The notes under the pieces were generated by a model. It had not been told where the DNA came from, made no database searches, and saw only the letters and a program-made list of their open reading frames with translations. A stretch of 63,433 nt of DNA, counting the filler, from Octopus bimaculoides (lineage: Eukaryota), in assembly GCF_001194135.2 (NCBI RefSeq). It is 7 parts of 7 records of this genome, joined end to end, with 100 filler letters (N's around TTAATTAATTAA, not from the genome) between each part and the next. Parts side by side here need not be neighbours in the genome. Positions count along the whole stretch, not along the records: positions 8,086 to 33,560 come from NC_068983.1; 6 more parts are not named here. The stretch is one strand, 5' to 3'. Positions 9,320 to 29,315 of this stretch are shown here, one piece after another. Every line of letters starts with the position of its first letter. Positions within the stretch are counted from its first letter, which is position 1. A program made the position numbers and the translations under genes.

Positions 9320-9640
9320 TCATCATCATCATCATCATCGTTTAACGTCCGCTTTCCATGCTAGCATGGGTTGGACGATTTGACTGAGGACTGGTGAAGC
9401 CAGATGACTACACCAGGCTCCAATCTGATTTGGCAGAGTTTCTACAGCTGGATGTCCTCCCTAACGCCAACCACTCAGAGTGTAGTGGGTGCTTTTACGT
9501 GCCACCAGCACGAATGCCAGTCAGGCGGTACTGGCAATGGCCATGCTCGAAAATGGTATATTTTATGTGCCACCCGCACAAGATCCAGTCCAGGGGCACT
9601 GACAACGATCTCGCTCGAAAGTGCTTACACATGTCACGGG
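9320..9640 (-). mobile_element. RTE LINE 3' UTR/tail with (GAT)n end
   Basis: Matches the multi-copy tail seen at 10715, 19235, 25080 and elsewhere. This tail is linked to RTE coding sequence at 28850-29315. Confidence 0.75.
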
Positions 9641-10029
9641 CACAAGTGCCATTCATATTTATACAAGTAATATCTGATGCACTTGGGTTTGAGAGTAAAT
9701 GCGTAAGTGACAATCTGGATAAGCTAGGGTTTCAGAGAAAGAAATCAGCCAGCTAACTCACGCATGGCAAATATAATCTGTAAGTGGAACAGTAAAAATA
9801 TGCAAGACTTTTCTCAAGTTTGAAATATGACATTGTTTTTGTTATTTGCATTCCAATGATGGAGATTTGTATCTTTGTTAGAAACCAGATCCTTCCTCAG
9901 AAGAAGAAACCAAATAACTAAAAGCAGAAATGAATGAACATAGATGCATAGATATATATGCATGCAAACAGGTATGCACACATGCACACACACATGTATA
10001 CATGGTGGTTGTGTACTCATTATGCAGAG

Positions 10030-10150
10030 TTGGACCACCAAGAGCTGCTGTTAAGCTCTGATCTTTGTGGATCTTAAAATGTCGTTTGAGGCCTCCATTA
10101 GATTTGCAGACCTTATGACATTGAAAAGTGTGCAGAGATATACAGGCAAA
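10030..10150 (-). pseudogene. Degenerate single C2H2-like finger, probably a LINE C-terminal remnant
   Basis: FQCHKVCKSNGGLKRHFKIH, with the first Cys pair apparently deleted. It is isolated among simple repeats. Confidence 0.35.
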
Positions 10151-10714
10151 GTAGCACATACATACATGATGGCCGTGATGATGGCCGTCCACTCGTGACC
10201 GAGGAAGACCATTGCCGACGAATGTCACATACATACATACATACATACATACATGTGCATATGTGTATATCTTCATCTTGACAGCATATGATGGTTGCAA
10301 ACAAGTAGCTCCATCATAGAAGCAATGTTCATTTGCAGTCTTCATGGTCATTCATAGAGAAATATTACTTTGCTGGAAACAGGCAAGGGTTGGTGACAGA
10401 AAGGGCATCAACTTCCAAGCCTTTTATAACTTAGGGCTTTATCAACCCTAAATCCATCCACACTGCAGTTTTTAAGATTTCTGTCTTCCTGCTTAACTGT
10501 AGAGCAATATGAAAATATAATATATATGTACATATTGTATTTATATTTATTTATCTATATATGTGTGTATGTATATGTGTGTGTATTATATGTTTACAGG
10601 GTCTAAAAAAAATAACCCTAAATATATATGTCCAACGATGGTTTAGCTGGCCAAAACTTCATAGTCACTGTCAACAACATTCTTCTTTAAGAATAGACTG
10701 TGTGAACAAAGCAT

Positions 10715-10985
10715 TGGACTGACTCCTCTGCAGGTGGCACGTAAAAAACACCATTTGAACGTGGCTGTTGCCAGTACTGCTGGACTGGCCCTCATGTCGG
10801 TGGCACGTAAAAAGCACCCACTACACTCTCAGAGTGGTTGGCATTAGGAAGGTCATCCAGCTGTAGAAACTTTGCCATATCAGATTGGAGTCTGGTGTAG
10901 CCATCTGGTTTGCCAGTCCTCAGTCAAATCGTCCAACCCATGCTAGCATGGAAAGCTGACGTTAAATGATGAAATGATGACGATG
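10715..10985 (+). mobile_element. RTE LINE 3' UTR/tail
   Basis: ggtggcacgtaaaaagcacc...caacccatgctagcatggaaagc..gttaaatgatga. Confidence 0.75.
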
Positions 10986-11369
10986 CTCTACAAAAGTACA
11001 AAAGTTTAGAGCAACCTATCAGATTAATGTAAAATTGTTTTTATTATAAATGAACACAAAAAGTATATATATATATATATNNNNNNNNNNNNNNNNNNNN
11101 NNNNNNNNNNNNNNNNNNNATATATAGGACTATTGTTGAGACCCTATTATTGTAAATAATATTGTAAGCCATGTTGTTACACTTACATTAAATTATATTT
11201 AAAAAATCAGTCAGTAAGGTTAATTACTTAGGAATGCCATCTGAATGAAAAACAATAGTTAGGTTTGGGTCAACATAATTAATAAAGTGACAGTCAAAAT
11301 CCAATTAAAAATATATGTGGTGAAGAAAAGACATCTTTAGCATAATAATAACAACTGTTATTATTTTCA

Positions 11370-13306: not shown

Positions 13307-13554
13307 CTATTTATAAAGGTTCTATATTATACACAGCCTTGATTTTTTATCTTATTACAAAATCCTTATATATATAAATATATATATATAAAGTTGTAGT
13401 ATATTGTCAACTAAATGTGACAATCCCAATAAGGGAATACACTACTGCTGTTTAGCCCTAGGAAGCTGGACAGCTTCCTGTTGGCCTTGACACAATTACT
13501 GTGTCCTTAGGTTTGTGAAGGGGAGACAAGCTCCCCCACCCAGCCTAGCCAGCA

Positions 13555-13597
13555 TTCAGGGACATGTTTCTGAGTCTTTGCTTGTCATCAGCCTGAA
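13555..13597 (-). ncRNA. Type-I hammerhead ribozyme motif
   Basis: UUCAGG-CUGAUGA-(14 nt)-GAAAC-AU-GUC-CCUGAA. Intact core, 6-bp stem I, palindromic stem III, weak stem II. Confidence 0.65.
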
Positions 13598-13904
13598 GTA
13601 GCTTCCCGGCTAGTTAGAGAGGCCTGTTTCTCCTTCACAAACTTATGTAAATCATAGTGAAGTTCATTCACTGATCAGCAAAATTAGAAATATAATATTT
13701 CTAAATCTCTCAGAGAGATTTAAGCAGTAGTGGAGCGACAAAGTTGTAGTATATTGTCAACTTAATGTGACAATCCCAATAAGGGAATACACTACTGCTG
13801 TTTAGCCCTAGGAAGCTGGACCGCTTCCTGTCGGCCTTGACACAATTACTGTGTCCATAAGTTTGTGAAGGGGAGACAAGCTCCCCCACCCAGCCTAGCC
13901 AGCA

Positions 13905-13947
13905 TTCAGGGACATGTTTCTGAGTCTTTGCTTGTCATCAGCCTGAA
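13905..13947 (-). ncRNA. Type-I hammerhead ribozyme motif (identical second copy)
   Basis: Identical 43-mer to 13555-13597. It lies in the loop of the 156-bp inverted repeat. Confidence 0.65.
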
Positions 13948-14248
13948 GTAGCTTGTCTTCCCTTCACAAACTTAAGGACACAGTAATTGTGTCAAGGCTG
14001 ACAGGAAGCAGTCCAGCTTCCTAGGGCTAAATAGCAGTAGTGTATTCCCTTATTGGGATTGTCACATTAAGTTGACAATATACTACAACTTTGTCGCTCC
14101 ACTACNNNNNNNNNNNNNNNNNNNNNNNNNNNNNNNNNNNNNNNNNNNNNNNNNNNNNNNNNNNNNNNNNNNNNNNNNNNNNNNNNNNNNNNATATATAT
14201 ATATATATAATCTCTTCATATATATCAATATATATATTTAATCTCTAT

Positions 14249-17090: not shown

Positions 17091-17372
17091 CAATGTGGGT
17101 GCTGCCTGTCTGGCTCCCATGCCGGTGGCATGTAAAAAGCACCATCCAAGTGTGGTTGATGCTAGTACCACCTGCCTGGCGCTCGTGCCAGTGGCACGTA
17201 AAAAGCACCCACTACACTCGCAGAGTAGTTGGCATTAGGAAGGTCATCCAGCTGTAGAAACCATCAGACTGGAGCTTGGTACAGCCTTCCGGCTTGCCAG
17301 TCCTCAGTCAAACTGTTCAACCCATGTCAGCATGGAAAGTGGATGTTAAACAACAATGACAATGATGATGGT
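17090..17372 (+). mobile_element. RTE tail
   Basis: Internal ggtggca(t/c)gtaaaaagcacc repeats and a GAT-like tail. Confidence 0.7.
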
Positions 17373-19234: not shown

Positions 19235-19559
19235 TTAGCACCATTTGAGCGCGATCGTTTCCAGCTTCGCTTTACTGGCACTCATGCCAGTGGCATGTGA
19301 ACAAAACATTGGTTGACTCCTGTTTAGGTGGCACATAAAAAACACCATTTGAGCATGGACATTGCTAGTACTGCCAGACTGGCCCTCATGCCGGTGGCAC
19401 GGAAAAAACAGCCACTACACTTTTGGAGTGGTTGGCGTTAGGAAGGGCATCCAGCTGTAGAAAGTCTGCCAGATCAGATTGGAGTCTGGTGTAGCCATCC
19501 GCTTCGCCAGACCCCAGTCAAATCGTCCAACCCATGCTAGCATGGAAAGCATATGTTAA

Positions 19560-19615
<56 letters not shown>
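19235..19615 (+). mobile_element. RTE tail with long (GAT)n
   Basis: Matches the tail family. Confidence 0.75.
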
Positions 19616-20047
19616 AATGTATGTATGAAATGCAATGTATGTATGTCAGATCACTTGTGACATCAATTGGGTGCTGCTGGTAATATGGAATCCAGTCCAA
19701 CCTGTTGCATGGTCAGCTCAGTGGTAACTAAGCCCTGGCTTGTCTCTGGATCATGTCAACAGGGTAGAAAAGGTCACAAAGTGTTGTGAGGGAAAGCATT
19801 CAGCTACAAGAACAATCAAAATAAACTTACTGTTGAAGCAGAAATACTGACAGGCAATAGCAGGCTTAAACAATGTATTATAGGAACAGTTGCTTGTATA
19901 ATTTGCTTGATGNNNNNNNNNNNNNNNNNNNNNNNNNNNNNNNNNNNNNNNNNNNNNNNNNNNNNNNNNNNNNNNNNNNNNNNNNNNNNNNNNNNNNNNN
20001 NNNNNNNNNNNNNNNNNNNNNNNNNNNNNNNNNNNNNNNNNNNNNNN

Positions 20048-20173
20048 CCTCATCTTGTTTGTTATTAACACAACGTTTTAACTGATATACCCGCTAGCCC
20101 ACAGGCATATGGCATAGTTGTTAAGAGCGCGGGCTACTAACCCCAAGATTCTGAGTTCGATTTCAGGCAGTGA

Positions 20174-20208
<35 letters not shown>

Positions 20209-20381
20209 TCGAAAAATACTTTAGGAATGAGAACCTAGGTTCGAAATTTCCCCAAGACACCTGATGAAGGCTGGAGGGTATATCAGCCGAAATGTTGTGT
20301 TAACAACAAACAAGATGAGGACAAATATCCGTTAAATGTAAATAATGTACATAATTCCTCATCCTTTAAATATACAACTGT
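20048..20381 (+). mobile_element. tRNA-headed SINE-like element with a hammerhead, preceded by an inverted partial copy of its own 3' part
   Basis: A-box-like TGGCATAGTTG (20110), B-box-like GAGTTCGATT (20153), (AAT)n, and a hammerhead at 20256-20301. 20048-20098 is the reverse complement of about 20272-20321. Confidence 0.7.
20256..20301 (+). ncRNA. Minimal type-I hammerhead ribozyme motif
   Basis: GACAC-CUGAUGA-A-GGCUG/CAGCC-GAAA-UG-UU-GUGUU. Confidence 0.65.
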
Positions 20382-20864: not shown

Positions 20865-21140
20865 TGATAATGGTTTCAAATATCGGCACAAGGCCAGCAA
20901 GTTCAGGGGAAGGGGCTAGTCAATTCTTTTCTACCCTAGGCACAAGGCCCGATATTTTTGGGGAGGGGACCAGTCGCTTAGATCGACCCCAGTATGCAAC
21001 TGGCACTTAATTAATCAACCCCGAAAGGATGAAAGGCAAAGATGACCTTGGTGGAATTTGAACTCAGAACATAAAGACAGATGAAGTATTGCTAAGCATT
21101 TCGCCCAGCGTGCTAACGTTTTTGCCAGCTTGCTGCCTTT
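20865..21140 (-). mobile_element. SINE family B: one full copy plus a second 3' tail
   Basis: tcgaccccag..gaaaggatgaaaggcaaag..gaatttgaactcagaac..gctaagcattt. Two different tails are in tandem. Confidence 0.7.
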
Positions 21141-21264: not shown

Positions 21265-21690
21265 CAAGTAAGATCGTAGTCATGGCCGATGCCAGTGTCA
21301 CGTAACTGGTCTGTTAAAAGCACCCTTCAATCGTTGGGTGATATGTTGTGCTTGTGAAGACCTGTTGAACTGAGTGAAATTGTAGTCGTGGCCGATGCCA
21401 GTGCCATCTGACTGGTATCTGTGCCAGTAGCATGTAAAAAGCACCGTTTGAGCATTGGGCTTCATGGAGGCAGTGACAGGTGACCGAGACCTTTAGTGAT
21501 GTACTGTGCTTGTGTAGACATGTCAAGCCAACTGAGGCCATAGTCATGGTTGATGCTGGTGTCAGGTCATTGGCACCATGCCAGTGGCATGAAAGAACAC
21601 CCACTACACTCTCAGAATGGTTGGTGTTAGGAAGGGCATCCAGCTGTAAAAAACCTTGCCAAATCAGATCGGAACCCAGTGCAAAACGTG
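21265..21690 (+). mobile_element. RTE 3' region with tandem subrepeats
   Basis: Repeated gtcgtggccgatgccagtg and gaagacctgttg units, then the common tail. Confidence 0.65.
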
Positions 21691-22194: not shown

Positions 22195-22412
22195 TAAGGT
22201 GTCAGAATCGTTACCATGCTGGACAAAATTCTTAGTGACATTTCTTCCAACTCTACGTTCTAGGTTCAAATGCCACCAGGGTAGACTTTACCTTTCATCC
22301 TATCAAGGTTGACAAAATAATTAGCAGCTGAGCACTAGGGTCGATGGAATCAACTGACAACACCCACCCCCACCTCATTCTTGGCCTCATGCCAAAATTT
22401 GAAACCCATATT
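22195..22412 (+). mobile_element. SINE family B
   Basis: cagaatcgtta..ggttcaaatgccacc..cctttcatcc..ggcctcatgccaaaatttgaaacc. Confidence 0.65.
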
Positions 22413-22481: not shown

Positions 22482-22532
<51 letters not shown>

Positions 22533-22770
22533 TTAACGTCTGCTTTCCATGTTAGCATGGGTTGGACGATTTGACTGAGGACTGGTGAAACCAGATAGCT
22601 ACACAAGTCTCCAATCTGATTTGGCAGAGTTTCTACAGCTGGATGCCCTTCCTAATGCCAACCACTCTGAGAGTGTAGTGGGTGCTTTTACGTGCCACCA
22701 GCATGGGAGCCAGTCAGGCAGCACTGGTATTGACCATACTCGAATGGTGCTTTTTACATGCCACCAGCAA
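22482..22770 (-). mobile_element. RTE tail with (CAT)n
   Basis: Matches the tail family. Confidence 0.75.
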
Positions 22771-23563: not shown

Positions 23564-23619
23564 NNNNNNNNNNNNNNNNNNNNNNNNNNNNNNNNNNNNN
23601 NNNNNNNNNNNTATATATG

Positions 23620-23934: not shown

Positions 23935-24215
23935 ACATCATCATTGTTTAACATCTGCTTTCCATGCTAGTATGGGTTGGACGATTTAACTGAGGACCGG
24001 CGAACCAGATGGCTGCACCAGGCTCCAATCTGATCTGGCAGAGTTTCTACAGCTGGGTGTCCTTCCTAATGCCAACCACTGCGAGAGTGTAGTGAGTGCT
24101 TTTATGTGCCACCAGCATGGGGGCCAGTCAGGCGGTACTGGTAATGTCCATGCTCAAGTGGTGTATTTTATGTGCCACCTGCGCAGGAGCCAGTCCAGTA
24201 GCACTGTATGTATTA
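23935..24215 (-). mobile_element. RTE tail
   Basis: Matches the tail family. Confidence 0.75.
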
Positions 24216-25079: not shown

Positions 25080-25695
25080 GCATACCTTTCCTTCATTGGA
25101 CACTAAATTCCGCTTGCGAAGACCTGTTGAGGCAAGTGAAATCGAAATCGAACCAAATTCAACGACTGGCACTCATGCCAATCTTTCCTTCATTGGACAC
25201 TAAACTCGGCTTGCAAAGACCTGTTGGGGCAAGTGAAAGCAAAATCGTGATGGCACCCATACCAGTGGAGCACTAAGAGCACCGTCCAAGTGTGATCATT
25301 ATCAGAGCTGCTGTCTGGCTTCCGTGCCAGTGGCACGTAAATAGAACCATTTGAGCGTGATTGTTACCAGCGTCGCTTTCTTGGCACGTGCAAAGACATT
25401 AGAGCGAGGTCATTGCCAGTGCTGCTGGACTGGCTCCTGTGCAAGTGGCATGTAAAATACACCATTTTGAGCATGGCCATTGCCTGTACCGCCTGACTGG
25501 CCTTCGTGCCAGTGACACGTAGAAGCACCCACTACACTCTCAGAGTGGTTGGTGTTAGGAAGGGCATCCAGCTGTAGCAACTCTGCCAAATCAGATTGGA
25601 GCCTGGTGCAGCCTTCTGGTTTGCCAGTCCTCAGTCAAATCGTCCAACCCATGCTAGCATGAAAAGCGGACGTTAAACGATGATGATGATGATGT
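25080..25695 (+). mobile_element. RTE 3' UTR with multiple tandem subrepeats and a (GAT)n tail
   Basis: Duplicated ctttccttcattggacactaaa..gaagacctgttg.ggcaagtgaaa and several gtggcacgtaaa units. Confidence 0.75.
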
Positions 25696-27755: not shown

Positions 27756-27814
27756 ATGAACGTCTTCCATCAAAATTTCATGTTAATTTATGTTCTAAAC
27801 ACCAGACTAACAAT

Positions 27815-28262
27815 CGTTTCTGCTATAGACACAAGGCTCAAAATTTTGGAGGGTGGGGGCTAATCAATTGCATCGGCCCCAGTGCCCAACAGCTGCTTAT
27901 TTCAGTGACCCTGAAATGATGAAAGGCAAAGTCGACCTTATCCTTGGTGGAATTTGAACCCAGAATGTAAGGATAAACGAAACACTGCTAAGCATTTTGT
28001 TTATTGCGTTGATGAATCTAACAGCTTGCCACCTTAAACACCAGCTTAATTATCCTTTCTGCTATAGGTACGAGGCCTGACATTTGGGGGAGGGGACTAG
28101 TCGATTACATCAACCCCAGTACTTGACTGGTACTTATTTTACTGACACCGAAATGATGAAACGCAAATTCGATCCCAGCAGAATTTGAACTCAGAACATA
28201 GCAATGGGTGAAATACTGCTAAGCATTTTGCCCAACACGCTAACGACTCTGCCAGCTCAACA
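27815..28262 (-). mobile_element. Two tandem SINE family B copies
   Basis: Two heads and tails at about 27815-28035 and 28055-28262. Confidence 0.75.
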
Positions 28263-28264
28263 CC

Positions 28265-28494
28265 TTAACCCTTTCATTACCAACCCAGCTAAAACTGTAT
28301 CTGGCTCTGTAGTACAAATGTTTTGTTTTCATAAGTTCTGAATTAAAATCTTCCACCAAACCTTAGTCACAATTTATGTTCCTAAAACAAGCTTAATTAT
28401 AACGAAGTTATTTTACTAAATTCTTTGTTATATTTAGAATTAATTGAAAGAAACACAGAGCATCTCAACAGAAATATAGTAGCAAAAGGGTTAA
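28265..28494. mobile_element. TTAA-flanked MITE, followed by a second copy at 28511 to about 28705
   Basis: TTAA-CCCTTTCATTACC...GTAGCAAAAGGG-TTAA. Confidence 0.7.
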
Positions 28495-28766
28495 AGTCAC
28501 CGTGATATTTTTAACCCTTTTGTTACCAACCTGGCTGAAACCAGCTCTGGCTCTGTGGTACAAATGTCTTGTTTCCATAAGTTTTGAATTAAAATCTTCC
28601 ACCAAACCTTAGTCACAATCTATGTTCCTAACACTAGCTGAATGTTAATTTAAGTTATTTTACTAAATTCTTTGTTATATTTAAAGTAAATGAGAGAAAT
28701 ACAGTATATATATGTGTATNNNNNNNNNNNNNNNNNNNNNNNNNNNNNNNNNNNNNNNNNNNNNNN

Positions 28767-28849: not shown

Positions 28850-29315
28850 GTACGAACAGCCATGCTACATGGCAGTGGAACATAGACTGTGACTGCTGAG
28901 GACATGCATAAGCTCGCAAGGAATGCAGCCAGTATGCTCCTCTGGATGTGTAATGTCAATGTGCATACCCATCAGAGTGTAAGTATCTTGAGAGAAAAGC
29001 TGAACATAAGAAGCATCAGTTGTGGTGTGCAAGAGAGATGATTGTGCTGGTATGGACATGTGGTGAGAATGAATGAGGATAGCTGCGTGAAAAAGTGCCA
29101 CACCCTAACAGTTGAGGGAACCCGTGGAAGAGGTAGGCCCAGGAAGACCTGGGCTGAGGTGGTGAGGCAAGACCTTCGAACATTGGGCCTCACCGAGGCG
29201 ATGACTACTGACCGAGACCTTTGGAAATGTGCTGTGCGTGAGAAGACCCGGCAAGCCAAGTGAGATCGTTGCCAGTGCCCCTGGACTGGCTCTTGTGCGG
29301 GTGGCACATAAGATG
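28850..29315 (+). mobile_element. RTE-clade LINE 3' coding end running into the common tail
   Basis: LREKLNIRSI..WYGHVVRMNEDSCVKKCHTLTVEGTRGRGRPRKTWAEVVRQDL..DRDLWK. Confidence 0.9.

What the first reader, a model, noticed from the sequence alone, without database searches (positions are those of the whole stretch)
13391..14105. 350-nt tandem, highly structured hammerhead-bearing unit (non-LTR retrozyme-like) ending in a 156-bp foldback
Seen: an identical 43-nt type-I hammerhead on the minus strand at 13555-13597 and 13905-13947 (CUGAUGA, GAAAC, GUC site, 6-bp stem I, palindromic stem III ACAUGU). The predicted cuts are exactly 350 nt apart. The unit is full of hairpins: a perfect 16-bp pairing of 13632-13647 with 13856-13871, plus gtgaa/ttcac, tagaaat/atttcta, aaatctctc/gagagattt, ggaagc/gcttcc and gacaca/tgtgtc. 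After the second ribozyme the sequence switches at that 16-bp stem into an inverted copy, so the ribozyme sits in the loop of a 156-bp hairpin. The two copies differ at several bases, which argues against an assembly duplicate. Established: metazoan non-LTR retrozymes are tandem units of a few hundred nt with minimal type-I hammerheads that yield circular RNAs and are thought to use Penelope-like machinery. Inferred: this is such a family, with a template-switch inversion. Caveat: stem II (CAAGCAAAGACUCA) pairs weakly.
Basis: partly seen in the sequence, partly recalled or inferred. Interest (0 to 1): 0.85.

Follow-up and report, generated by a model that had tools for sequence, protein, structure and literature searches.

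The report
Decayed hammerhead retrozyme insertion in octopus
This is a short, mutated insertion of a known kind of animal mobile element (a hammerhead-ribozyme "retrozyme") in an octopus-like genome; its ribozyme has probably lost one helix, and its tandem-plus-inverted layout matches what Penelope-like retroelements leave behind, so it is a new example of a known thing.

Summary
A 350-nt unit is repeated 1.6 times (13390-13954, 98% identical). It is followed by an inverted copy (13950-14105, 97% complementary to 13727-13882). The same 43-nt hammerhead-like motif lies on the minus strand at 13555-13597 and 13905-13947.

The motif has the geometry of canonical metazoan type I hammerheads. The core is intact, helix I is 6 bp, helix II has the 4+6+4 layout, and helix III is one A-U pair closing a palindromic CAUG loop. 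Chance gives about 0.016 comparable motifs per piece.

Helix II keeps only 2 of 4 pairs. Both mismatches are A·C, and reverting two CpA to CpG gives a perfect CGAG/CUCG helix. The unit's CpG observed/expected ratio is 0.13. I read this as a ribozyme inactivated by CpG decay.

- The array runs into an assembly gap (14106-14192).
- (TA)n lies on both outer sides.
- The inversion joins at a 5-nt microhomology (AGCTT, 13950-13954), not at the 16-bp stem.

The layout is head-to-head, with 3' ends pointing outward into (TA)n. This is the published insertion pattern of Penelope-like elements.

The host is an octopod. I could retrieve no other copies, so conservation, activity and circular RNA remain untested. 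Verdict: new member of a known kind, modest interest.

The parts
13367..13389 (.). (TA)n microsatellite directly abutting the 3' end (sense orientation) of the minus-strand array; presumed insertion target
   Evidence: TRF row 13367-13390, period 2; sequence
13390..13739 (-). Full 350-nt unit (unit 1); sense, as defined by hammerhead polarity, is the minus strand
   Evidence: Direct repeat family D1, spacing 350; blastn of the unit against the piece
13740..13954 (-). 5'-truncated unit 2 (215 nt), 98% identical to unit 1 (5 differences at 13763, 13822, 13832, 13857, 13860)
13555..13597 (-). Hammerhead-like motif, copy 1. Helix I is 13597-13592 / 13560-13555. CUGAUGA is 13591-13585. The helix II region is 13584-13571 (CAAG-CAAAGA-CUCA), with A.C mismatches at 13584/13571 and 13583/13572. 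GAAA is 13570-13567. The palindromic loop CAUG is 13566-13563. U16.1 is 13562 and C17 is 13561. The inferred cut is 13561|13560.
13905..13947 (-). Hammerhead-like motif, copy 2, identical to copy 1; inferred cut 13911|13910; lies in the 67-nt loop of the foldback
13608..13647 (.). One arm of the unit's own long-range pairing. It pairs with 13508-13545 and with 13856-13895, and includes the perfect 16 bp 13632-13647 / 13856-13871. This pairing extends helix I into a rod.
   Evidence: I3 and I4; MFE structures
13950..13954 (.). AGCTT, a 5-nt microhomology shared by the 5' end of unit 2 and the 5' end of the inverted copy: the head-to-head junction
   Evidence: D1 ends at 13954 and I1 starts at 13950; sequence
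13950..14105 (+). Inverted, 5'-truncated copy whose sense is the plus strand. It starts 29 nt downstream of the cut-site position, runs through the unit boundary (ctacaacttt|gtcgctccactac) and is cut off by the gap. It has 5 differences from unit 2 and 7 from unit 1.
14106..14192 (.). Assembly gap (87 N) that hides the outer end of the inverted copy
14193..14237 (.). (TA)n-rich microsatellite directly after the gap; probably the other half of the target microsatellite
   Evidence: TRF row 14193-14237; sequence

Best explanation
This is an old, decaying insertion of a non-autonomous hammerhead retroelement (a metazoan non-LTR retrozyme) in an octopod genome.

Proposed origin (inferred):
- An RNA with a ~350-nt unit, whose sense is the minus strand, was reverse-transcribed at a nick in a (TA)n microsatellite. 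The template was multimeric or circular, which gave more than one unit in tandem.
- A second priming or template-switch event produced an inverted, 5'-truncated copy.
- The two cDNAs were joined head-to-head through a 5-nt microhomology (AGCTT).
- This is the architecture that Penelope-like element (PLE) machinery leaves behind.

The ribozyme:
- It belongs to the canonical metazoan type I class: helix I of 6 bp, helix II of 4 bp closing a 6-nt loop, and helix III of one A-U pair closing a palindromic tetraloop that would need a dimer to be stable.
- In this copy, two CpG-to-CpA transitions turned helix II from CGAG/CUCG into CAAG/CUCA.
- The ribozyme is therefore probably inactive or very slow, and the locus is a relic rather than a working circular-RNA gene.

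Shown here: the repeat anatomy, the motif and its statistics, the helix II defect, the strong CpG depletion, and the flanks.
Inferred: the retrotransposition mechanism, the PLE partner, the ancestral CG state, and the loss of activity.
For: Repeat anatomy.

The motif is unlikely by chance:
- 0.016 motifs with core plus helix I of at least 6 bp are expected per piece.
- The array occupies about 3% of the piece.

The geometry matches experimentally active retrozyme hammerheads:
- Coral: ACUGCA-CUGAUGA-GGCC-AGAAA-GGCC-GAAAC...
- Mussel: CUGAUGA-GUCU-UUUGU-AGAC-GAAAC-GCGCGUC. Both are from the supplement of PMC7229834.
- Schistosoma: GUCC-CAAAUA-GGAC-GAAAC-GCGUC (AF036740, quoted in PMC5666329).
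- Here: CAAG-CAAAGA-CUCA-GAAAC-AUGUC. The 4+6+4 spacing is the same and loop 2 matches Schistosoma at 5 of 6 positions.

Helix II decay:
- Reverting two CpA to CpG is the only change needed for a perfect 4-bp helix.
- Only 0.5% of random 14-mers are perfect helices and 0.5% are repairable in this way.
- CpG observed/expected is 0.13 in the unit against 0.32 in the piece.
- The restored version folds into the hammerhead shape at -13.8 kcal/mol.
- CpG decay is visibly at work in this locus. At the CpG retained in unit 2 at 13832-13833, unit 1 has TG and the inverted copy has CA.

RNA structure: the monomer RNA is strongly self-paired, with helix I extended into a rod, as described for retrozyme circular RNAs (PMC7229834).

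Architecture:
- Taking hammerhead polarity as sense, the two arrays are head-to-head with their 3' ends pointing outward to (TA)n.

Host: octopod. A LINE-tail ORF is 79% identical to an Octopus vulgaris protein, and interspersed repeats are shared with O. vulgaris.
Against: - No second locus of the family could be found. There is none elsewhere in the 25-kb piece, none in metagenome or viral contigs, and none through ORF look-ups. Multi-copy status, a consensus helix II and covariation are therefore untested.
- Both local ribozymes carry the same two helix II changes. The defect thus predates the local duplication or insertion. That means either a defective template was still mobilised, or CAAG/CUCA is the family's native state.
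- No Rfam hammerhead model matches. This is weak evidence, because Rfam also misses a better-formed motif at 20261.
- There are only 1.6 direct units, and TRF does not call the array.
- No PLE ORF or any Pfam domain was found in the ORFs of the piece.
- The inverted part ends in an assembly gap.
- (TA)n runs are common here (2.5% of the piece), and gaps in this assembly tend to sit in them.
Confidence: 0.62

Rival explanations
1. One reading: a working retrozyme. The hammerhead self-cleaves, probably as a dimer through the palindromic ACAUGU, and yields a 350-nt circular RNA. CAAG/CUCA is a tolerated or native helix II.
For: - The core, the 6-bp helix I (extendable to 12 bp) and the palindromic helix III are intact.
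- Axolotl HHR_Amex2 has a U.U mismatch at the base of helix II and still cleaves, better as a dimer (PMC7229834).
- Two motifs lie 350 nt apart in one transcript.
- Both copies share the same helix II.
Against: - Both base pairs next to the core are mismatched, leaving only A-U and G-C.
- The hammerhead fold costs +2.1 kcal/mol against an MFE of -9.4.
- All tested retrozyme hammerheads used for comparison have 4 Watson-Crick pairs with G10.1-C11.1.
- The two mismatches have the signature of CpG decay in a strongly CpG-depleted unit.
- Identity of the two motifs is not significant (P = 0.33).
Confidence: 0.12
2. The direct 1.6-unit array is real, but the inverted copy is an assembly error. It would be sequence from another copy of the family joined wrongly at a contig end next to a scaffold gap.
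For: - The inverted arm runs straight into an 87-N gap.
- The assembly is scaffolded and has six gaps in 25 kb.
- PLE-type tandem/inverted insertions are reported to cause problems in short-read assemblies (PMC8557442).
- The arm differs by 3-5% from both neighbouring units, as a copy from another locus could.
Against: - The join has only 5 nt of overlap (AGCTT). That is too short for an assembler to join on, so at least some reads must span it.
- Divergence of the inverted copy from units 1 and 2 (4.9% and 3.2%) is similar to that between units 1 and 2 (2.3%), as expected if all three arose in one event.
- Head-to-head orientation with 3' ends outward is what the biology predicts.
Confidence: 0.2
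3. An ordinary structured satellite or foldback DNA with no ribozyme ancestry; the hammerhead resemblance is chance.
For: - No Rfam match.
- Helix II is not formed.
- No other copies are available to show conservation.
- The fold z-score is equally strong on both strands, as for any DNA-level inverted repeat.
Against: - Chance expectation is 0.016 per piece for core plus helix I.
- That figure does not yet count the palindromic helix III, the exact 4+6+4 spacing with loop 2 matching at 5 of 6 positions, or repairability by two CpG reversions (about 1%).
- The motif's polarity agrees with the head-to-head architecture.
Confidence: 0.06
4. The repeats are the pseudo-LTR and inverted 5' fragment of an autonomous Penelope-like element whose body is deleted or hidden, rather than a separate non-autonomous retrozyme family.
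For: - PLE pseudo-LTRs carry hammerheads, and PLE insertions show exactly this partial-tandem plus inverted layout.
- Xenopus retrozymes are related to PLE pseudo-LTRs (bioRxiv 10.64898/2026.07.22.740005).
Against: - The unit is 350 nt and repeats directly with no ORF between copies.
- No RT or GIY-YIG signal was seen in ORFs of the piece.
- The gap is estimated at only 87 nt.
- PLE hammerheads are usually the minimal class with a long helix II (PMC4209133). This motif has canonical geometry.
Confidence: 0.06

Closest known systems
Metazoan non-LTR retrozymes (Cervera & de la Pena 2020, PMC7229834): coral Amil224, mussel Mg353, axolotl Rtz331/Rtz353
   Same: - Tandem unit of 350 nt (mussel 350-390, axolotl 330/350).
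- GC below 50% (42.6%).
- No LTR or ORF.
- Type I hammerhead with a 6-bp helix I that opens into a highly self-paired rod.
- Helix II of 4 positions with a 5-6-nt loop.
- Helix III of one pair closing a palindromic tetraloop, as in axolotl HHR_Amex1, which needs a dimer.
   Different: - Helix II has only 2 of 4 pairs, with none next to the core.
- There are only 1.6 direct units.
- An inverted copy is attached.
- Expression, circular RNA and copy number are unknown.
- I found no report of cephalopod retrozymes in the papers I could search.
Penelope-like element insertions (Craig, Yushenova, Rodriguez & Arkhipova 2021, PMC8557442)
   Same: - Partial tandem plus an inverted 5'-truncated copy adjacent to the 5' end.
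- (TA)n microsatellite at the insertion site, so no recognisable target-site duplication.
- Such loci break short-read assemblies.
- A hammerhead core is present.
   Different: - No RT/GIY-YIG ORF.
- The unit is only 350 nt.
- The (TA)n bias is documented for the Naiad and Neptune clades, and which clade (if any) mobilised this element is unknown.
- Naiads lack canonical hammerheads and are only remnants in cephalopods.
Canonical metazoan type I hammerheads of satellite DNAs (Schistosoma Sm-alpha, newt satellite 2)
   Same: - Core CUGAUGA...GAAAC.
- GUC cleavage triplet.
- 4+6+4 helix II layout with loop CAAAGA (Schistosoma CAAAUA).
- Palindromic ACNNGU helix III.
- From memory only (not checked here): a UAC just 5' of the 6-bp helix I, as in the Schistosoma crystal construct.
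   Different: All eight helix II stem positions differ, and two of the four pairs are broken.
Minimal hammerheads of PLE pseudo-LTRs (Cervera & de la Pena 2014, PMC4209133)
   Same: Weak or absent helix III, presumed dimeric action, and a retroelement context.
   Different: The minimal class has a long helix II (6-8 bp), a short helix I (4-5 bp) and a bulged base 5' of helix II. The motif at 20261-20296 in this window fits that class better than the finding's motif does.

Membership tests
Hammerhead ribozyme, type I | Conserved core nucleotides C3 U4 G5 A6 N7 G8 A9, G12 A13 A14, A15.1-U16.1, and H17 at the cleavage site | tested here: met
   CUGAUGA ... GAAA-C-AUG-U-C on the minus strand, read directly; exact string present twice
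Hammerhead ribozyme, type I | Helix I formed by the 5' and 3' flanks (open end), about 6 bp | tested here: met
   UUCAGG / CCUGAA, 6 Watson-Crick pairs, extendable to 12 with two bulges
Hammerhead ribozyme, type I | Helix II: a stem starting at 10.1-11.1 next to the core (4 bp in canonical metazoan motifs) | tested here: not met
   CAAG/CUCA gives C.A, A.C, A-U, G-C. Contiguous pairing from the core is 0. The hammerhead fold costs +2.1 kcal/mol. The helix is restored only by two CpA-to-CpG reversions.
Hammerhead ribozyme, type I | Helix III (in metazoan type I: 1-2 bp closing a small palindromic loop) | tested here: met
   A15.1-U16.1 closes CAUG, and ACAUGU is a palindrome. This matches the description in PMC4209133 and of HHR_Amex1.
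Hammerhead ribozyme, type I | Match to the Rfam hammerhead covariance models | tested here: not met
   No match at gathering score or at E <= 10. As a control, Rfam also misses the well-paired motif at 20261, so this test has low power for short-helix-III variants.
Hammerhead ribozyme, type I | Self-cleavage | not testable with these tools
   Needs in vitro transcription assays
Metazoan non-LTR retrozyme | [quoted passage not shown] | tested here: inconclusive
   Two motifs lie exactly 350 nt apart. However, there are only 1.6 units, TRF makes no call, and the motifs are incomplete in helix II.
Metazoan non-LTR retrozyme | Low GC (<50%), no LTR/PBS/PPT, no ORF | tested here: met
   GC is 42.6%. 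The longest start-to-stop ORF is 59 aa (the open frame is 74 aa stop to stop), and the open frame has no Pfam match and the ORF no homologue.
Metazoan non-LTR retrozyme | Monomer RNA predicted to be stable and highly self-paired | tested here: met
   Linear -133.1 kcal/mol, z -8.5. Circular -127.3 kcal/mol, 66% paired, z -8.9.
Metazoan non-LTR retrozyme | Multi-copy family dispersed in the genome | not testable with these tools
   No other copy in the 25-kb piece. The eukaryotic genome is not searchable here, and the scans of other collections were empty.
Metazoan non-LTR retrozyme | Expressed as linear and circular RNA of unit length | not testable with these tools
   No transcriptome access
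Penelope-like-element-mediated insertion | Partial tandem plus an inverted 5'-truncated copy adjacent to the 5' end | tested here: met
   Minus-strand array 13954->13390, plus-strand copy 13950->14105+, joined 5' to 5'. The pattern is as described. Caveat: the outer end is hidden in a gap.
Penelope-like-element-mediated insertion | Microsatellite, especially (TA)n, at the insertion site | tested here: met
   (TA)n at 13367-13389 and 14193-14237. The background coverage of (TA) runs of at least 4 repeats is 2.5% of the piece. The right-hand side is separated from the element by the gap.
Penelope-like-element-mediated insertion | Autonomous PLE (RT + GIY-YIG) in the same genome with related terminal sequence | not tested
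   No domain hits in ORFs of the piece. The genome as a whole could not be searched.

The most novel reading that the evidence does not exclude
An editing-dependent hammerhead. Both helix II mismatches are A.C, the context that ADAR enzymes prefer. In a cephalopod with pervasive A-to-I editing, inosine at 13583 and 13571 (13933 and 13921 in copy 2) would pair with C and restore a 4-bp helix II. Cleavage and circular-RNA formation would then depend on editing.

My evidence does not exclude this, but CpG decay explains the same two bases more simply. A 4-bp stem is also not an obvious ADAR substrate.
Probability: 0.02. Interest if true: 0.85.

Novelty: new member of a known kind. Interest (0 to 1): 0.3.

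Why it matters
Retrozymes with type I hammerheads are known from corals, mussels, other invertebrate phyla and amphibians. I found no report for cephalopods in the papers I could search, so this extends the host list.

The locus also carries two hallmarks of Penelope-like insertion on a retrozyme: a head-to-head inverted 5'-truncated copy and a (TA)n target. This is structural evidence that is independent of the sequence-similarity argument that PLEs mobilise animal retrozymes. It could be tested genome-wide by scoring retrozyme arrays for these features.

The inferred CpG decay of helix II gives a concrete prediction: younger or master copies should read CGAG/CUCG.

In itself, though, the locus is most likely a dead relic.

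Tried and rejected
- Rfam at gathering score and at E <= 10 on the locus: no ribozyme family. A weak Metazoa_SRP hit (24.9 bits against a gathering score of 70) only reflects the foldback, so I rejected it.
- Rfam on the second motif: nothing. I used this as a control for Rfam's sensitivity.
- Copies elsewhere in the piece: none.
- Pattern scans of metagenome contigs (two patterns) and viral contigs: no hits. These collections hold no cephalopod DNA, so this says little.
- Using the 59-aa ORF of the unit to pull related contigs: no exact product and no homologue.
- A 168-aa repeat-derived ORF: no exact product and no homologue.
- tRNA scan of the piece: none.
Ten stop-free frames gave no significant domain.
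- The Octopus vulgaris locus L001 shares only interspersed repeats with the window. It is not syntenic and has no copy of the unit.
- Supplement of PMC8557442: not held. Martick & Scott 2006: not held. The loop 1 UAC comparison therefore rests on memory.
- Alternative registers for helix II (a bulged 5' base, other GAAA positions, an intermolecular helix II in a dimer): none gave more than two pairs.
- An ADAR signature among the copy differences: the counts are too few, and the CpG contexts explain them.
Full report
**What is in the sequence**

The window piece is AT-rich (35% GC), full of microsatellites, and broken by six runs of N.

- Positions 13390-13739 are a 350-nt unit.
- 13740-13954 repeats its first 215 nt with 5 differences.
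- From 13950 to 14105 the sequence is the reverse complement of 13727-13882: 156 nt, with 5 differences.
- That arm passes through the unit boundary (ctacaacttt|gtcgctccactac). Tandem continuity is therefore also present in the inverted copy.
- The arm ends at an 87-N assembly gap (14106-14192).
- (TA)n lies immediately left of the array (13367-13389) and immediately right of the gap (14193-14237).
- No other copy of the unit exists in the piece.

**The junction**

Unit 2 follows unit 1 up to 13954, and the inverted arm begins at 13950. The overlap is AGCTT, so the inversion joins through a 5-nt microhomology.

The resemblance just beyond the junction (13951-13974 against 13622-13645, 83%) arises because the natural unit is itself imperfectly self-complementary around the ribozyme (I3 and I4).

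Five nucleotides are too few for an assembler to join on. Reads must therefore span the junction, or it comes from a chimeric read.

The three copies differ pairwise by 2.3%, 3.2% and 4.9%. This is what one would expect if all three arose in one event and then diverged.

**The hammerhead motif**

On the minus strand, the motif reads UUCAGG-CUGAUGA-CAAG-CAAAGA-CUCA-GAAA-CAUG-U-C|CCUGAA, at 13597-13555 and 13947-13905.

- All core positions are present.
- Helix I has six Watson-Crick pairs and extends to twelve with two bulges.
- Helix III is A15.1-U16.1 closing the palindromic CAUG.
- The cleavage triplet is GUC.

I wrote a descriptor that ignores helix II. It is expected 0.016 times per piece at helix I of at least 6 bp. 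The array covers about 3% of the piece.

The layout is that of the canonical metazoan type I class: helix I 6 bp, helix II 4 bp, helix III 1-2 bp with a small palindromic loop (PMC4209133). Comparators:
- Coral: CUGAUGA-GGCC-AGAAA-GGCC-GAAAC.
- Mussel: CUGAUGA-GUCU-UUUGU-AGAC-GAAAC-GCGCGUC.
- Schistosoma: GUCC-CAAAUA-GGAC-GAAAC-GCGUC.

The present motif has the same 4+6+4 spacing, and its loop 2 matches Schistosoma at 5 of 6 positions. Its single-pair helix III with a palindromic tetraloop is like axolotl HHR_Amex1, which cleaves poorly as a monomer and well as a dimer.

I therefore accept hammerhead ancestry.

**Helix II is broken**

CAAG/CUCA gives C.A, A.C, A-U and G-C.

- The hammerhead fold of a 55-nt fragment costs +2.1 kcal/mol against an MFE of -9.4.
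- The fragment is no more stable than shuffles (z -0.1 to -0.4).
- Every experimentally active comparator has four Watson-Crick pairs, with G10.1-C11.1.

Both mismatches are A.C, and both adenosines follow a C. Reverting the two CpA to CpG gives CGAG/CUCG, a perfect helix, and this is the only such repair. Random 14-mers form a perfect helix 0.5% of the time and are repairable this way 0.5% of the time.

The unit is strongly CpG-depleted, with observed/expected 0.13 against 0.32 for the piece. CpG decay is visible among the copies. At the CpG that unit 2 keeps at 13832-13833, unit 1 has TG and the inverted copy has CA. The restored sequence folds into the hammerhead shape at -13.8 kcal/mol.

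The simplest reading is a ribozyme inactivated by two methyl-CpG deaminations on the plus strand, at 13571 and 13583 (13921 and 13933 in copy 2).

Both local copies share these changes. The defect therefore predates the local duplication. Either a defective template was mobilised, or the array grew or was homogenised at the DNA level afterwards. I cannot tell which.

Identity of the two 43-nt motifs is not evidence of selection (P = 0.33).

**Rfam**

No hammerhead model matches, even at E <= 10. Rfam also fails on a better-paired motif at 20261, so this negative result is weak.

**RNA structure**

- The 350-nt monomer, cut site to cut site, folds at -133.1 kcal/mol (z -8.5).
- As a circle it folds at -127.3 kcal/mol, 66% paired (z -8.9).
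- Helix I continues into a long imperfect rod made by 13508-13545 / 13608-13645 and their equivalents.
- The plus strand folds nearly as well (z -7.4), as expected for DNA-level inverted repeats. Folding alone therefore does not identify the strand.
- These features match descriptions of retrozyme circular RNAs.

**Architecture and mechanism**

Take hammerhead polarity as sense.

- The minus-strand array runs 13954->13390, with its 3' end at (TA)n.
- The inverted copy is sense on the plus strand. It runs 13950->14105 and on into the gap, beyond which (TA)n resumes.
- The two are joined 5' to 5', and both are 5'-truncated at positions unrelated to the cut site.

Craig et al. describe PLE insertions in these terms. 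They are 5'-truncated partial tandems. [quoted passage not shown] They show a (TA)n insertion bias that hides target-site duplications. Such loci trouble short-read assemblies (PMC8557442).

Retrozyme reviews propose reverse transcription of circular RNA giving cDNAs longer than one unit, with PLEs as the likely helpers. A 2026 preprint relates Xenopus retrozymes to PLE pseudo-LTRs.

That the polarity given by the ribozyme agrees with the head-to-head orientation is an independent consistency check, though it had an even chance of agreeing by luck.

Two caveats apply. (TA)n covers 2.5% of this piece, and gaps here tend to sit in (TA)n. The right-hand flank therefore counts for less than the left.

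**Host and context**

- A LINE-tail ORF (29042-29260) is 79% identical to a hypothetical protein of Octopus vulgaris.
- The piece shares several interspersed repeat families with an O. vulgaris chromosome segment at 70-95% identity, without synteny.
- The source is therefore an octopod or a close relative.
- No Pfam domain was found in ten stop-free frames, and there are no tRNA genes. The neighbourhood is non-coding repeat sequence.

**What could not be done**

No tool here searches eukaryotic genomes or transcriptomes. Attempts through metagenome and viral scans and ORF look-ups returned nothing. Family size, the consensus helix II, covariation, expression and circular RNA are all untested. 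So is the reality of the junction in reads.

**Verdict**

- The locus is best read as a decayed retrozyme insertion with a PLE-type layout (confidence about 0.6).
- It is not a demonstrably working ribozyme unit (about 0.12).
- An assembly contribution to the inverted part remains possible (about 0.2).

This is a new member of a known kind, of modest interest.

Noticed in passing
window 20256-20301 (+), with inverted arms 20048-20099 / 20269-20320: A second and better-formed hammerhead-like motif: GACAC-CUGAUGA-A-GGCUG-(10-nt loop)-CAGCC-GAAA-UG-UU|GUGUU.
- Helix I is 5 bp. Helix II is 5-6 bp with a bulged 5' A. This is the layout described for minimal hammerheads of Penelope-like elements.
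- The MFE fold is the three-way junction, at -13.7 kcal/mol.
- Its 3' half is repeated in inverted, degenerate form 170 nt upstream, directly next to another assembly gap (19913-20047).
- tRNA-like sequence and (AAT)n lie between the two arms.
- Rfam does not match it, and there is no other copy in the piece.
   Followed up: partly
window 9320-9650, 10715-10985, 17120-17370, 19239-19585, 21387-21683, 22508-22769, 23936-24206, 25170-25694: At least eight copies, in both orientations, of a ~270-330-nt interspersed repeat. Its frames read ...LQSDLAEFLQLDALPNANHSE.... It is shared with Octopus vulgaris (L001) at 72-84% identity and is probably a SINE family.
   Followed up: partly
window 28973-29265 (+): A fragment of a LINE 3' end. 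The open frame ...GRGRPRKTWAEVVRQDL... is 79% identical in protein, and 87% in DNA, to an annotated hypothetical protein of Octopus vulgaris. This identified the host lineage.
   Followed up: yes
window 20972-21139, 22197-22355, 27812-28286; L001 16585-18150: These segments match a tandem array in the O. vulgaris locus whose copies start about 184 bp apart, at 70-86% identity. This is another repeat family shared between the two genomes.
   Followed up: no
window 11081-11119, 14106-14192, 23564-23611, 28720-28766: Four of the six assembly gaps are bordered by (TA)n runs. This assembly evidently breaks in TA microsatellites, which weakens the value of the right-hand (TA)n flank of the finding.
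   Followed up: partly
window 13805-13996 (+): A weak Rfam hit to Metazoa_SRP (24.9 bits, gathering score 70, E 2e-4). It is produced by the long foldback stem and is not an SRP RNA.
   Followed up: yes
window 9881-10351 (-): A 157-aa open frame with a C2H2 zinc-finger-like stretch (FQCHKVCKSNGGLKRHFKIH) amid low-complexity sequence. It has no Pfam hit and may be a decayed zinc-finger gene fragment.
   Followed up: partly
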